Shown piece by piece: positions 17,740 to 38,697 of a stretch of 60,625 bases of DNA. The position numbers and the translations under genes are program-made. Every line of letters starts with the position of its first letter. The first letter of the stretch is position 1. A model generated the notes under the pieces. The model made no database searches, was not told where the DNA came from, and saw only the letters and a list, made by a program, of their open reading frames with translations. The DNA comes from Vitrella brassicaformis CCMP3155 (lineage: Eukaryota > Protista > Chromerida): positions 1-60,625 of the forward strand of contig CDMY01000516.1 in the NCBI GenBank assembly GCA_001179505.1, given 5' to 3'.

Positions 17740-18039
17740 NNNNNNNNNNNNNNNNNNNNNNNNNNNNNNNNNNNNNNNNNNNNNNNNNNNNNNNNNNNNN
17801 NNNNNNNNNNNNNNNNNNNNNNNNNNNNNNNNNNNNNNNNNNNNNNNNNNNNNNNNNNNNNNNNNNNNNNNNNNNNNNNNNNNNNNNNNNNNNNNNNNNN
17901 NNNNNNNNNNNNNNNNNNNNNNNNNNNNNNNNNNNNNNNNNNNNNNNNNNNNNNNNNNNNNNNNNNNNNNNNNNNNNNNNNNNNNNNNNNNNNNNNNNNN
18001 NNNNNNNNNNNNNNNNNNNNNNNNNNNNNNNNNNNNNNN
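17740..18039. other. Assembly gap (300 N)
   Basis: N run flanked by poly-G. Confidence 1.
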
Positions 18040-32203: not shown

Positions 32204-33449
32204 CTACTTGCAGCCGAGAGACAAGAAGAACTCCTCGCAGGCTTCCATTTCAAGGTCGACATACATATCCTCAGCTGGCTCCTCGATAATCCCTTCCTCC
32301 TCCTCACTCTCTTCTTCTTCTTCCTCTTCACTGGCCTCGTCTCCCTCGTCCATTGGCGGAGACGGCGCCACTCGCGTTGAGAAGGCGTCGTAGTCATCAA
32401 ATACACCGGCAGGGGCCTCCTCCTCGTATCGATTTGGCCTGATCACCCTGAAGGTGTAGTTGCAGATCTGGCGTGCAGGCGGCTGTGTGGGCGGGGGCGG
32501 CTGCCGATGCTGTTCTTCTACTGGGAAGGGGTACGTCAGGCGGGGCCTCTGCGCCAGGCCATAGGTCGGATCCAGAGGGCCGATCTCGTGGAGATGGTCG
32601 ATGATAGGCTCTGTTTGTCCTTTTGCAGGTCGTTTGGCCAGCCTCATGTCGGCACTGCAAAAGAAGAAAACAACGCGCAAAAAAGAGAGATTAGGGGCCT
32701 GGCTCAGCGAGTGGATGACGTGCTACCTGAGTGAAGCGCCGAACGCTCCGACAAAGATCATCTTGTGAGGGGCAACCTGCTTCTTGATGTGCTACAGGGT
32801 GGGCTTGAAGTCCGCATCACCGCTGAACAGTATCACGCCATGCACATCAGGCTCGACGGCCGCCTGCGTCAGGAACGAGGCGATCAGCGGGTCGGCTCCC
32901 TTCTGCACGAGGTGGCACAGATTCGCCTTACAGCCGTAGCACTTGACTCTCTTCGGCTTGAGGCCAATCTGCTTGACTTCGAGGTTGAAGTGTGCCCTCT
33001 GGCTTGACAAGTCCCAATGAAGCCATGCCAGCTTGTTCCTATCGTTTTCCGCTCGCTGAAGCTGACGCTCGAGTGCGGCGCCGGTATAGCGGCTGGGGAG
33101 GGACCACGCCGTGTCGTCCAGATGTCTCTTGGGATCCACATTGACGAAGATGATGTGGCCGTCCACCAGCTGAATCGGGTGATCGGTCTTGGCTGCGAAG
33201 TCGGTGATCATGCCGAGGACGAGGCCTTCGAACTCTGAATGGTGAGGATTGACCTTCCTTGTCTGCCGCTGCTTCTTCTCATACTTGTACCAGCCCTGGA
33301 TAAAGTTGGCGCCGTCCACGATGAGCGCACAGCGAAGTACACGCTGAGGAAACAGAAGCGCACACACGCATATTCAGCCTCACAGCGCACTAGCGCCACT
33401 GCCATGGCCTTACTTGCTGTGACGAGCGGTGTGCTGAGGACCTGGCCAT
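32204..33449 (-). CDS. NYN (LabA/DUF88, PIN-like) RNase with a CxxC insert and acidic tail, interrupted by an in-frame TAG at 32794-32792 (pseudogene or readthrough)
   Basis: Exons 33449-33414, 33343-32727 and 32654-32204. Motifs LIVDGAN, KCYGC, VQKGADPLIA and LFSGDADF; after the TAG the frame continues HIKKQVAPHKMIFVGAFGASLS|ADMRL. Confidence 0.8.
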
Positions 33450-35511: not shown

Positions 35512-35811
35512 NNNNNNNNNNNNNNNNNNNNNNNNNNNNNNNNNNNNNNNNNNNNNNNNNNNNNNNNNNNNNNNNNNNNNNNNNNNNNNNNNNNNNNNNN
35601 NNNNNNNNNNNNNNNNNNNNNNNNNNNNNNNNNNNNNNNNNNNNNNNNNNNNNNNNNNNNNNNNNNNNNNNNNNNNNNNNNNNNNNNNNNNNNNNNNNNN
35701 NNNNNNNNNNNNNNNNNNNNNNNNNNNNNNNNNNNNNNNNNNNNNNNNNNNNNNNNNNNNNNNNNNNNNNNNNNNNNNNNNNNNNNNNNNNNNNNNNNNN
35801 NNNNNNNNNNN
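35512..35811. other. Assembly gap (300 N)
   Basis: N run flanked by C/G homopolymers. Confidence 1.
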
Positions 35812-36048
35812 GGGGGGGGGGGGGGGGGGGAGGGAGGGAAGACTCACTATGAATGCATCTCACCAAAAACTAGAGATGCATTTATTCGGTCTGTAAGACA
35901 CGCACGACATACACCTTCAGCATGTACGCATCGCATCTTAGAAGACCAGCGCCACGCCCGTGGACAAACACGGGGCAACGAAATAGTAAAATAGCATATT
36001 ATATCATTAGTCAATATTGTATTCTATTGCTCGCACCGAGAGAGCACC

Positions 36049-37894
36049 TCACACCAAACAGAGCACTTCGACCCTGTCAGCCATGAAATCCAACTCCCCG
36101 CCCAATATTGCATCACCGTCCTCGTCTATCTTCCCCATACATTCCTTAGGTACATAGCGCTTAGGAGTGTACTGGTGGCAGCGGCGAATGTCGGTGCCAT
36201 CAGTAGCCAACCACAGCGACTCACCCACGCCCAACTTTTCATCCGCCCCGCCCACCCTCACACCCTTCCTGCAACGAATCGGCTTCGGTTTCATGAAGTG
36301 ACCATTGAGCGAGAAAAGACGCACAAATGTCTCGTACTCATGGCTCTTGGTCAGGTCCTCCTGGGGGAGCTGCAGGCCGCCTTCGATGTATGCGCCGAAG
36401 ACGTAGCTGTCTTTGTAGATGACGACGAGCAGCTTCTCCTGGTCGCCAACATGCTCGACCATGTTGTCAAACGATGTGCCGTGCTCATCCGACCTGTGTG
36501 ACAGACATACAAGGGGAGAAAATATTGCTTGATTGTGTATTTGTGACCTACCGGTAGAGTGATCGTGTTGTAATTTCGTTCTCGAACAAGCTGCGCAGCC
36601 CTAGGGCGCGAAGGACTGGAGTGGTGTCCGTAGGCAAAACACGGCCAAAGTTCTGCACAACTCCATCATCAAGGCAACATGAGCATGAGGGAGAGGAGCC
36701 TCGCTGGAGCTTCTTGTGCGTACTTTCAGCCATTTCTGGCAGTACTGCGGCCTGTCCAGCTCAATGGTTTCGACCCTCCACCTGGTCCTATACTCATCTC
36801 TGCGTACAGACACGCCACACGCACAGACGCGCCCATGTGCTGCCGCCCCTGCGCGTGTGTCTGTGTCAAGGCATATTTGTGTGGGTCCGGCCTACGCGAT
36901 GTTGTGAGAGAATCCGACCACGACGACCCGCAGCCCCTGCTTGGAGCATTTGTGGACGCCTTCGTGGAAATCCTTGTCACCAGCAAATCTGACGGAACCG
37001 AAACGAAAAAAGAGCGTATGCATGGCGGTCATAGCCCCCCNNNNNNNNNNNNNNNNNNNNNNNNNNNNNNNNNNNNNNNNNNNNNNNNNNNNNNNNNNNN
37101 NNNNNNNNNNNNNNNNNNNNNNNNNNNNNNNNNNNNNNNNNNNNNNNNNNNNNNNNNNNNNNNNNNNNNNNNNNNNNNNNNNNNNNNNNNNNNNNNNNNN
37201 NNNNNNNNNNNNNNNNNNNNNNNNNNNNNNNNNNNNNNNNNNNNNNNNNNNNNNNNNNNNNNNNNNNNNNNNNNNNNNNNNNNNNNNNNNNNNNNNNNNN
37301 NNNNNNNNNNNNNNNNNNNNNNNNNNNNNNNNNNNNNNNNCCCCCCCCCCCCCCCCCCCTCTGCATGCTTACAGAACGATAATAGTATTCTTCCTCTGCC
37401 CTGTCTGTGCTTTCATTGCTATTTTCTGCAGCTTCATGGCTATATCACAAGCGGTCCCTTCCTCCTGGCCACTCAGCTTGTAGCCGAACAGCTTGACTTT
37501 CCCGCCCTGAAGCCGCACGTCCTCTTGCAGCTCGGCTCGCCTCTGCACAGAGGACAGGGGACGCACATGAGCGCGTGTGGGTGCGCCTGTGCGCCTGTGC
37601 GCCTGTGCGTGAGTGTGTGAGTGTGACTGCTGACCGAATACTGAGGCTTCCCGTCATAAAACTTGACACCTGGAGGCACTTCTAATACATCCGCAATACA
37701 GTCGACGATGCCCTTGAACATCACCCCATTCAATTCAATGCCGTATCTGTCCTTGACGGACTTCTGAACACGCCATACGCATCAGCATAGATCTGTGTGT
37801 TGCCTTCCCCATTTCCGAAGGGTCTTCACGTGTGACTGACCACCATGTATGCCCCATCGACAAGGAAGGGCGACTTGGAGAGAGGCGGCGCCAT
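36049..37894 (-). CDS. NYN domain-TLDc domain fusion protein, 7 exons (one intron spans the gap)
   Basis: Exons 37894-37841, 37763-37635, 37542-37373, 36988-36896, 36799-36724, 36652-36552 and 36493-36049 splice in frame with GT-AG. NYN: FLVDGAYM, KFYDGKP, QEEGTACDIA, IIVLFAGDKDF, RVVVVGFSHNIADEY. TLDc: SLYRSDEHGTSF..LLVVI..YVFGAY..LFSL..DRVEV. Confidence 0.85.
37041..37340. other. Assembly gap (300 N) inside an intron of the NYN-TLDc gene
   Basis: N run flanked by poly-C. Confidence 1.
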
Positions 37895-38697
37895 GGCTGA
37901 TGGGACAGAACGACAGCCTATTACTGTTCAAAAAGTGAAACCGTCTCTTACCCAATCCGCTTGTGCGTTAACGCCATTTGCAATGCCATCATGCGACGTG
38001 TTTCAGCCATGTCCATCCGCCACCCCCATCCATGCATGAGTGAATTCGCAGAGAGAAGCAAGCTGAGAAGTAATTGAGCATGCTCATCGGTCCATTCCAT
38101 TCATTCCCTGAGCCACTGGCTGCTGGCCTGGCTGTTGTCGCTTCGCGTGCACCTTTGACCCATGCATCAGACATCAGATGTGTGTACAGCAGCAGGCAGA
38201 CAGACAGACAGACATCGAGGCATGCCCGGCTTGGCTAAATTCGGGCGTGCGGCCAAGGAAGGAAAAGGCAAACAGGCGGCAAGACAGACAGACAGACAGT
38301 ACATAAGGGTTACGAATCTACACACCAAGCATCCAGACAGACCTGTGTGTGCATCATCATGACCGAATTGACTTGACGTCCCCTCCTCTCGCCCCGTCGA
38401 GTCGGCCAGCCACTCCCCCTCCCTCACACACACACACACACACGCCACATCGCACTCACTCTCCTGTCCCTGGCCGCACTCTCCCAACAGCAGCACACAG
38501 AGACGGCCAGACACCCGACCCGGTGTGGTTACCACACGCTTGTATACAGACAGACATACGTACAGAGCTCGAGAGAGAGAAAGGCACGGAAAAAGCCGTC
38601 AGTAAGGCAGTAAGTCGCTCGGTCAATTGGTCGGCCGATCGGGCCATCGGCCGATGGATGGATGGATGGTGGGCCGGTCGATGCATCCATCCATCCA

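What the first reader, a model, noticed from the sequence alone, without database searches (positions are those of the whole stretch)
36049..37894. NYN ribonuclease domain fused to TLDc, hidden across seven exons and a gap
Seen in the sequence: seven exons splice in frame. They give an N-terminal NYN/PIN-like domain (LVDGAY, FAGDKDF, VVVGF..ADEY) joined directly to a TLDc domain. The ORF track shows only the TLDc exon. Established: NYN domains are metal-dependent endoribonucleases; TLDc domains bind V-ATPase and are linked to oxidative-stress resistance. Inference: I know of no described NYN-TLDc architecture; it could be an RNase tethered to endomembranes or gated by stress. The usual K-G-x-D acidic residue reads EGTA, with an Asp two residues later, so catalysis may be altered.
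Basis: partly seen in the sequence, partly recalled or inferred. Interest (0 to 1): 0.82.

Follow-up and report, generated by a model that had tools for sequence, protein, structure and literature searches.

The report
Expressed NYN–TLDc fusion gene of Vitrella
This is a real, transcribed seven-exon gene of the alga Vitrella brassicaformis, already in GenBank, that joins an RNase-type NYN domain to a TLDc domain; no paper describes this pairing, Vitrella has at least four copies, and this copy lacks one of the catalytic aspartates.

Summary
On the minus strand, seven GT-AG exons (37894 down to 36049) splice in frame to 355 aa. This is letter for letter GenBank CEM19587.1 / UniProt A0A0G4FWJ1 of Vitrella brassicaformis CCMP3155.

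- **Gap:** the 300-N gap lies inside intron 3, in a poly-C run. A spliced 1148-nt cDNA contig joins exon 3 directly to exon 4, so no coding sequence is hidden there.
- **NYN and TLDc in one mRNA:** RNA contigs from other runs carry junctions 4/5, 5/6 and 6/7.
- **Domains:** both pass Pfam's curated cut-offs (NYN 31.8 bits against 24.2; TLD 35.6 against 24.5). An AlphaFold model of the NYN part matches LabA-like 2qip (Z 16.6) and MARF1 NYN (Z 15.0).
- **Active site:** Asp13, Asp122 and Asp124 are kept. The Asp at the start of helix α3 is Ala92, with Asp94 two residues on. Seven aligned relatives keep that Asp, and MARF1 needs it for cleavage.
- **Family:** this is one of at least four NYN–TLDc paralogues, inside a TLDc expansion (at least 84 clusters) in which every named member sampled is from Vitrella.

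I found no relative outside Vitrella and no paper naming both domains. The scan had already noted two other NYN–TLDc fusions elsewhere in this genome. Function is untested. The pairing is new to the literature, but the gene itself is already annotated, so interest is moderate.

The parts
37841..37894 (-). Exon 1: start codon and residues 1-18, NYN strand β1 with Asp13 (37856-37858)
   Evidence: ATG with an in-frame stop 13 codons upstream. Donor is GTCAGT. The last 4 nt are seen at the 5' end of cDNA L001. Paralogues P0055 and P0097 align across the exon 1/2 junction.
37635..37763 (-). Exon 2: residues 19-61, NYN helices and strand β2 ending at Asp55 (37653-37655)
   Evidence: Contained 100% in cDNA L001. 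The AlphaFold model places strand β2 at residues 49-56.
37373..37542 (-). Exon 3: residues 62-118 (the last codon is split); holds EGTACD, with Ala92 (37450-37452) where NYN domains have Asp, and Asp94 (37444-37446)
   Evidence: cDNA L001 has identical sequence. Alignments A4 and A6 show Asp in all 7 relatives at the Ala92 column.
36989..37372 (-). Intron 3, which contains the 300-N assembly gap 37041-37340 inside a poly-C (minus strand poly-G) run
   Evidence: GTAAGC donor and CAG acceptor. The cDNA skips this stretch exactly. DNA contigs of runs X3 and X5 break here with 19-22 C as loose ends.
36896..36988 (-). Exon 4: residues 118-149, NYN strand β4 and the FAGDKDF motif (Asp122 at 36976-36978, Asp124 at 36970-36972)
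   Evidence: This exon alone gives a Pfam NYN hit, E 0.0054. It is spliced to exons 5-7 in RNA contig X1 record 2 and in L001.
36724..36799 (-). Exon 5: residues 149-174, the end of the NYN domain and a linker helix ending in WLK
   Evidence: Joints 36799/36896 and 36652/36724 are seen in runs X1 and X2 and in L001.
36552..36652 (-). Exon 6: residues 175-208, the linker and the start of the TLDc domain
   Evidence: A joint skipping 58 nt (36494-36551) is seen in X1 and in L001. The TLDc subfamily profile covers residues 185-355.
36049..36493 (-). Exon 7: residues 208-355 plus the stop codon, the bulk of the TLDc domain
   Evidence: Pfam TLD scores 29.5 bits on this exon alone and 35.6 bits on the full protein, against a cut-off of 24.5. 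Foldseek matches solved TLDc structures with E down to 4e-8.
35919..36048 (-). 3' untranslated region seen in the cDNA contig
   Evidence: L001 positions 1019-1148 map here without mismatch.

Best explanation
Shown: this is a transcribed, correctly spliced gene of Vitrella brassicaformis. It encodes a 355-aa cytosolic-type protein with no N-terminal extension. Residues about 8-175 form a NYN (PIN-like) nuclease fold. Residues about 185-355 form a TLDc domain. The assembly gap is a poly-C run inside intron 3 and hides no exon. The gene is one of at least four paralogues with this same architecture. They arose within a large TLDc expansion in which every named member I sampled is from Vitrella, and the data fit a single fusion event followed by duplication.

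Inferred: the NYN module engages single-stranded RNA at a metal-binding acidic pocket, as in MARF1 and LabA-type proteins. The TLDc module serves as a docking or regulatory module. The only documented TLDc partner is the V1 sector of the V-ATPase. The protein would then direct or restrict RNA binding or cleavage to wherever the TLDc partner sits.

This copy has lost the Asp at the N-terminus of helix α3 (Ala92). I therefore take it to be a catalytically weakened or inactive member of the family, unless the displaced Asp94 substitutes.
For: - Gene model and splicing.
- Identity with CEM19587.1 of Vitrella.
- Pfam: NYN 31.8 bits (cut-off 24.2, residues 12-151) and TLD 35.6 bits (cut-off 24.5, residues 200-321).
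- NYN fold: AlphaFold model with pLDDT 82. VIA-align gives Z 16.6 to 2qip, 15.0 to mouse MARF1 NYN and 14.3 to human MARF1 NYN, then FEN and PIN nucleases.
- TLDc fold: Foldseek E 4e-8 to 1e-5 to Skywalker/TBC1D24, NCOA7, OXR2, mEAK7 and Oxr1.
- Paralogues P0055, P0087 and P0097 share both domains.
- TLDc tree: P0085 and P0087 are sisters (SH-aLRT 96). Holding all four together as one clade is not rejected (p-AU 0.978).
- Active site: Ala92 against Asp in 7 of 7 aligned relatives; Asp13, Asp122 and Asp124 are invariant.
- In mouse MARF1, each of D178A, D215A, D246A (N-terminus of α3) and D272A abolishes RNA cleavage: PMC6217404.
- TLDc proteins bind and regulate the V-ATPase: PMC8804929 and PMC11066047, and the complexes 7uzg, 7u4t and 7fde among the fold hits.
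Against: - No biochemical or localisation data exist for any member.
- The TLDc subfamily has at least 84 clusters at 50% identity, fused to RING, Tc5/CENPB HTH, CBM20 and LNR domains or arranged in tandem. A shared V-ATPase role for all of them is unlikely.
- Asp94 could restore metal binding, so 'weakened' is not shown.
- The Asp at the end of β2 is not conserved in bacterial PF01936 members, so the MARF1 four-Asp rule may not transfer exactly.
- The Logan RNA contigs did not cover exons 1-3. The support for exons 2-3 in mRNA comes from the one JGI cDNA contig, which may derive from the same culture collection data.
Confidence: 0.6

Rival explanations
1. This copy is a fully active Mg2+-dependent endoribonuclease. 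Asp94, in the first turn of helix α3, takes over the role of the lost Asp, so the catalytic residue has simply moved by two positions.
For: Against its closest paralogue P0087 (KGVDCG), this protein reads EGTACD. The Asp-to-Ala change at 92 comes together with a Gly-to-Asp change at 94, and the alignment around it needs no gap. That pattern looks like a paired change. Asp13, Asp55, Asp122 and Asp124 are all kept. The ORF is intact and transcribed.
Against: All 7 aligned relatives, four of them distant metagenomic NYN proteins, keep the Asp at the canonical column. In MARF1 the equivalent D246A abolishes cleavage. The conserved Lys of K-G-x-D is Glu89 here, and the Ser of S-G-D is Ala120. The loop just before the site is modelled with low confidence (residues 82-87, pLDDT under 50).
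Confidence: 0.25
2. The NYN-TLDc proteins belong to a rapidly diversifying, lineage-specific system, such as defence against selfish elements or viruses, or a transposon-linked system. In that reading TLDc is a variable recognition or oligomerisation module joined to interchangeable effector domains (RNase, E3 ligase, DNA-binding HTH), with no link to the V-ATPase.
For: The exhaustive search gave only 84 cluster representatives, and every named member of the 27 clusters I looked up is from Vitrella. Fusion partners are Tc5-transposase HTH (9 members), RING (about 8), NYN, CBM20 and LNR, plus secreted-looking tandem TLDc arrays. Genes lie in clusters on single contigs. MARF1-type NYN RNases restrain retrotransposons in mouse oocytes.
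Against: No conflict-system hallmark was tested. No neighbouring TLDc gene lies in this window. TLDc domains have no documented recognition role of this kind.
Confidence: 0.13
3. The fusion is an artefact: two neighbouring genes merged by gene prediction, or two unrelated contigs joined wrongly across the gap.
For: The gap falls between the N-terminal NYN exons 1-3 and the rest of the gene. The Logan RNA contigs of X1 and X2 did not cover exons 1-3.
Against: cDNA L001 spans exons 2 to 7 in one open frame of 338 aa, including the exon 3/4 joint. NYN exon 4 is spliced to the TLDc exons in an RNA contig. The exon 3/4 joint rebuilds the NYN core motif. A transcript starting at exon 4 would have no Met before residue 219. 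Three paralogues on other contigs have the same two domains.
Confidence: 0.02

Closest known systems
LabA-like / COG1432 NYN proteins (Pfam PF01936; structure 2qip, VPA0982 of Vibrio parahaemolyticus)
   Same: This is the best structural match: Z 16.6, 156 of 162 residues aligned, rmsd 3.1 Å. The β1 Asp and the G-D-x-D-F motif after β4 are the same, and the Pfam NYN model is passed.
   Different: Sequence identity is only about 18%. The K-G-x-D aspartate is Ala92. A TLDc domain is fused at the C-terminus. The gene is eukaryotic and has introns.
MARF1 / limkain-b1 NYN domain (5yaa, 6fdl)
   Same: Same fold (Z 15.0 and 14.3). Acidic residues sit at the ends of β1, β2 and β4 (Asp13, Asp55, Asp122), which corresponds to D178, D215 and D272.
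   Different: There are no RRM or LOTUS/OST-HTH domains. The D246 equivalent is missing, the N181 equivalent is Tyr16 and the S270 equivalent is Ala120. Identity is about 10%.
TLDc proteins OXR1, NCOA7, TBC1D24/Skywalker, mEAK7
   Same: The C-terminal domain passes Pfam TLD and matches their solved TLDc domains (E 4e-8 to 1e-5, target TM about 0.6).
   Different: The N-terminal partner is NYN, not LysM/GRAM, TBC or EF-hand-like. The domain belongs to a divergent TLDc expansion sampled only from Vitrella. V-ATPase binding is untested.
Vitrella paralogues CEM30077.1 (P0087), CEM03385.1 (P0055) and P0097
   Same: Same NYN-TLDc order. P0087 matches over the NYN domain, the WLK linker and TLDc. P0087 is the sister of this protein in the TLDc tree.
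   Different: They keep the (K/Q)-G-x-D aspartate. P0055 and P0097 have long low-complexity linkers and an insertion in the NYN domain. Identity to this protein is only 35-38% over aligned columns.

Membership tests
NYN domain (Pfam PF01936, PIN-like superfamily) | Score above Pfam's gathering cut-off over most of the model | tested here: met
   31.8 bits against 24.2; residues 12-151 match profile positions 6-133 of 145. The N-terminal half alone scores 33.8 bits.
NYN domain (Pfam PF01936, PIN-like superfamily) | Three-layer α/β/α PIN-like fold that superposes on solved NYN domains | tested here: met
   Model pLDDT 82 and pTM 0.80. Z 16.6 to 2qip, 15.0 to 5yaa and 14.3 to 6fdl, well above the next rows.
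NYN domain (Pfam PF01936, PIN-like superfamily) | Asp at the C-terminal end of strand β1 | tested here: met
   Asp13 is invariant in all 8 aligned sequences and ends predicted strand 8-13.
NYN domain (Pfam PF01936, PIN-like superfamily) | Asp at the N-terminus of helix α3 (K-G-x-D motif; MARF1 D246) | tested here: not met
   Ala92 (codon GCT at 37450-37452, the same in the cDNA). All 7 aligned relatives have Asp there. Asp94 lies two residues later.
NYN domain (Pfam PF01936, PIN-like superfamily) | Asp after strand β4 in the (S/A)-G-D-x-D-F motif (MARF1 D272) | tested here: met
   Asp122 and Asp124 are invariant in all 8 sequences.
NYN domain (Pfam PF01936, PIN-like superfamily) | Metal-dependent ribonuclease activity | not testable with these tools
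   This needs a purified protein assay.
TLDc domain (Pfam PF07534) | Score above Pfam's gathering cut-off | tested here: met
   35.6 bits against 24.5; residues 200-321.
TLDc domain (Pfam PF07534) | Fold that superposes on solved TLDc domains | tested here: met
   Foldseek E 4e-8 to 1e-5 to 6r82, 8ar6, 4acj, 7obp and 7u4t, target TM about 0.6. The full-length model has only moderate confidence (pLDDT 64, and 70-87 over much of the TLDc part).
TLDc domain (Pfam PF07534) | Binding to the V1 sector of the V-ATPase | not testable with these tools
   Known for yeast and animal members only (papers found).
MARF1 / limkain-b1 family | NYN domain combined with RRM and LOTUS (OST-HTH) domains | tested here: not met
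   Pfam finds only NYN and TLD.
OXR1 / NCOA7 family | LysM and/or GRAM region upstream of the TLDc domain | tested here: not met
   The N-terminal part is a NYN domain.

The most novel reading that the evidence does not exclude
In Vitrella, TLDc has become a modular adaptor in a lineage-specific, tandemly amplified family that couples it to interchangeable effectors: NYN RNase, RING E3 ligase and transposase-type HTH. The NYN-TLDc proteins would then be a new kind of targeted RNA-decay or defence factor. This copy, with its relocated or lost catalytic Asp, would be a regulatory pseudo-nuclease that modulates its active paralogues.
Probability: 0.15. Interest if true: 0.6.

Novelty: new variant of a known kind. 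Interest (0 to 1): 0.38.

Why it matters
TLDc domains are understood almost only as V-ATPase regulators of yeast and animals. NYN domains are understood as RNases whose specificity comes from attached RNA-binding domains. A conserved family that joins the two directly would either link RNA decay to an endomembrane proton pump or show that TLDc can serve other partners. The large Vitrella expansion, with RING, HTH and NYN partners, points to the second reading.

Vitrella is a free-living photosynthetic relative of apicomplexan parasites, so lineage-specific RNA-control factors there bear on how that group evolved. The four paralogues also form a natural series. Two keep all four acidic residues, one lacks the β2 Asp, and this one lacks the α3 Asp. 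That series could be used to test which acidic residues a PF01936 nuclease really needs.

The practical weight is limited. The gene is already annotated, it is confined to one species as far as I could see, and no function has been measured.

Tried and rejected
- **PDB by sequence.** A search with the protein and with a 4-sequence NYN profile gave nothing meaningful. Only fold comparison linked it to solved NYN structures.
- **Word-indexed homologue searches.** The whole protein, the NYN region alone and a 3-sequence profile returned only the gene itself and Vitrella paralogues. This tool needs shared 5-residue words and a length window, so the blank does not prove absence elsewhere.
- **ESM Atlas.** The feature search gave no usable hit for the whole protein. 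The structure search listed separate NYN and TLDc clusters, and none carrying both families.
- **Metagenome scan with the NYN profile.** It returned five distant NYN loci (one a duplicate), all without TLDc in the matched ORF.
- **Logan RNA contigs.** They covered exons 4-7 but not exons 1-3. I do not read this as absence, because L001 covers exons 2-3.
- **Second NYN-like ORF in the window (32795-33373).** It is not a close paralogue (E 0.27 against the family profile) and gives no Pfam hit as a bare ORF.
- **Full-length AlphaFold model.** With a 4-sequence alignment it was mediocre (pLDDT 64). I used it only for the TLDc fold match.
- **Merged-gene or mis-scaffold reading.** Considered and rejected; see the rival explanations.

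Full report
**Source and gene model**

The window is a 60,625-nt contig of Vitrella brassicaformis CCMP3155. The protein collection holds a 355-aa protein seen on a contig of exactly that length, with accessions CEM19587.1 and UniProt A0A0G4FWJ1, 'NYN domain-containing protein'. I read the minus strand in three frames and placed exon borders at GT..AG sites. The seven exons are 37841-37894, 37635-37763, 37373-37542, 36896-36988, 36724-36799, 36552-36652 and 36049-36493. They give a 1068-nt open frame of 355 aa. This translation is identical to CEM19587.1.

**The gap**

The 300 N at 37041-37340 lie inside intron 3 (36989-37372). The known parts of that intron add up to 84 nt, and the other five introns are 58-96 nt. 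The gap is bordered by CCCCCC on one side and 19 C on the other. DNA contigs from two other runs, under different organism labels and studies, stop at 37040 and carry 19-22 more C as loose ends. So the gap is a long poly-C run that short-read assemblies cannot cross.

The decisive test is the mRNA. A 1148-nt contig from JGI sample 3300017297 (L001) carries an uninterrupted 338-aa frame. It equals my spliced CDS from position 51 to the stop, followed by 130 nt of 3' UTR, without a mismatch. It runs from exon 3 straight into exon 4 and rebuilds the NYN core motif IIVLFAGDKDF. No exon is hidden in the gap, and the two sides are in frame.

**Are the NYN and TLDc exons on one mRNA?**

Two runs, X1 and X2, proved to be RNA, because their contigs skip introns. 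X1 record 2 joins exons 4, 5, 6 and 7 at exactly the predicted borders. X2 shows junctions 4/5 and 5/6. Exon 4 on its own gives a NYN hit (E 0.0054), so NYN sequence and TLDc sequence are on one spliced molecule.

The same runs show no contig over exons 1-3. The tool warns that such holes prove nothing, and L001 covers exons 2 and 3. L001 and X1/X2 may come from the same culture-collection transcriptome project, so I count them as one or two sources, not three.

Exon 1 is the least supported part. The evidence is as follows:
- The first four bases of L001 (GGTG) match the end of exon 1 and not the intron (TCAG).
- An in-frame stop lies 13 codons upstream of the ATG.
- Paralogues P0055 and P0097 align without a gap across the exon 1/2 junction (FIVDGAYIQDSFKERRG against FLVDGAYMVKSVKDRYG), and P0097 starts at the same distance from the motif.

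**Domains**

The full protein passes Pfam's curated cut-offs for both families. NYN scores 31.8 bits against 24.2 (residues 12-151, profile positions 6-133 of 145). TLD scores 35.6 bits against 24.5 (residues 200-321).

A full-length AlphaFold model from a 4-sequence alignment was mediocre (pLDDT 64). It still matched solved TLDc domains of Skywalker/TBC1D24, NCOA7, OXR2, mEAK7 and Oxr1 at E 4e-8 to 7e-5.

A model of residues 1-178 from an 8-sequence alignment was good (pLDDT 82, pTM 0.80). Its best structural matches are:
- the LabA-like NYN protein 2qip (Foldseek E 1.8e-7; VIA-align Z 16.6, 156 residues aligned, rmsd 3.1 Å);
- the MARF1 NYN domains (Z 15.0 and 14.3);
- then FEN-type and PIN nucleases.

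The ESM Atlas model of the same protein independently lies nearest to NYN clusters (TM 0.73-0.74 over residues 5-176). The refutation condition 'no NYN/PIN hit for the first ~170 residues' is not met.

**Active site**

In mouse MARF1, four aspartates are each indispensable for RNA cleavage in vitro: D178 at the end of β1, D215 at the end of β2, D246 at the N-terminus of α3 and D272 at the end of β4 (PMC6217404). The situation here is:
- Asp13 ends predicted β1.
- Asp55 ends predicted β2.
- Asp122 follows β4, in A-G-D-K-D-F.
- The residue at the start of helix α3, after the invariant Gly90, is Ala92.

I aligned the three Vitrella paralogues and four distant NYN proteins from metagenomes. All seven have Asp at that column. 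Asp13, Asp122 and Asp124 are invariant.

Against the closest paralogue, the local alignment needs no gap (KGVDCGIVLKL against EGTACDIAMKL). The change is therefore Asp to Ala at 92 together with Gly to Asp at 94. The cDNA has the same codons, so this is not an assembly error. The conserved Lys is Glu89, the MARF1 N181 equivalent is Tyr16 and the S270 equivalent is Ala120.

I cannot decide whether Asp94 reaches the metal site.

**Relatives**

An exhaustive phmmer search with the TLDc exon against 1.84 billion cluster representatives found only 84 proteins at E up to 0.001. I looked up 27 of these clusters. Every named member is from Vitrella, and the unnamed ones come from JGI or ENA contigs. 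This is a divergent TLDc expansion that I sampled only from Vitrella.

Pfam on all 84 representatives shows these partner domains:
- Tc5-transposase/CENPB HTH in 9 members;
- RING fingers in about 8;
- NYN in 2;
- CBM20 and LNR in one each;
- proteins with two to four tandem TLDc domains.

Several of these genes share contigs, which indicates tandem clusters.

Searching my fetched proteins with the NYN part found P0055 (CEM03385.1) and P0087 (CEM30077.1). A profile search added P0097, which passes both Pfam cut-offs. At least four NYN-TLDc paralogues therefore exist. The scan's notes list two other NYN-TLDc fusions on other pieces of this genome, which agrees.

In a tree of 92 TLDc domains, this protein and P0087 are sisters (SH-aLRT 96), and P0055 and P0097 are sisters (92). 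A tree holding all four together is not rejected and in fact had the higher likelihood (p-AU 0.978). The NYN parts pair the same way. The two domains have therefore travelled together through duplication and long divergence (about 32-43% identity). This argues that the architecture is maintained and is not an accident.

**Outside Vitrella**

I found no protein with both domains outside Vitrella:
- The word-indexed searches over 5.8 billion proteins returned only the gene and its paralogues.
- The Atlas listed NYN clusters and TLDc clusters separately.
- A metagenome scan found only plain NYN proteins.
- No paper in the library holds both 'NYN domain' and 'TLDc', nor 'Vitrella' and 'TLDc'.

These searches have known blind spots. 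'Vitrella only' is what I saw, not a proof.

**Mechanism**

The gene, its splicing, the two folds, the missing Asp and the paralogue family are shown. The following is inferred:
- The NYN module binds single-stranded RNA at an acidic, metal-binding pocket.
- The TLDc module docks the protein to a partner. The only documented partner class is the V1 sector of the V-ATPase (PMC8804929, PMC11066047).
- This copy is weakened or inactive as a nuclease.

I hold the fully active reading, with Asp94 compensating, at about 0.25. I hold a V-ATPase-independent 'modular adaptor' reading of the whole expansion at about 0.13. The merged-gene artefact is essentially excluded.

**Verdict**

The architecture is real and undescribed in papers, but the gene is already annotated with both domains. 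It is one of four paralogues, and the functional ideas remain untested. I class it as a new variant of known kinds, of moderate interest.

Noticed in passing
window 17740-18039, 35512-35811, 37041-37340: Three of the four 300-N gaps sit at G/C homopolymers. The gap at 17740 has the same 'G17 TTGGG' on both sides, so the two contig ends probably overlap and the true gap is about zero. The gap at 35512 has CCCC on one side and G19 on the other.
   Followed up: partly
proteins P0002-P0084 and P0086-P0097 (other Vitrella contigs): There is a large TLDc expansion, at least 84 clusters at 50% identity. Every named member sampled is from Vitrella. Partners include Tc5/CENPB HTH, RING, CBM20 and LNR, and some proteins carry 2-4 tandem TLDc domains behind hydrophobic, signal-peptide-like N-termini (not tested). 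Several of the genes cluster on single contigs of 141,840 and 261,552 nt.
   Followed up: partly
window 32795-33373, minus strand: A second NYN-like ORF (motifs VDGANF, QKGAD, SGDADF) lies 2.5 kb downstream on the same strand. It is only remotely related to the NYN-TLDc family (E 0.27) and gives no Pfam hit as a bare ORF, which ends at an in-frame TAG. It is the subject of another note of the scan.
   Followed up: partly
window 36247-36321 and 36494-36518: Both RNA runs leave the same hole of 55-75 nt inside exon 7. One X2 contig runs 25 nt into intron 6, which suggests some unspliced RNA. Contig X1 record 2 begins exactly at the exon 4 acceptor (36988), as expected where an assembly graph branches between spliced and unspliced forms.
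   Followed up: no
L002:83-934 (metagenome contig Ga0209737_10445032): An AT-rich contig encodes a 284-aa NYN protein (Pfam 32.4 bits) with the same IIDGAY and VLVAGDKDF motifs as the Vitrella family and a CxxC insertion, but no TLDc. It could be the nearest non-Vitrella relative of the NYN part.
   Followed up: partly
window 38190-38450: (CAGA)n and (CA)n microsatellites lie just upstream of the gene's start, in the intergenic region.
   Followed up: no
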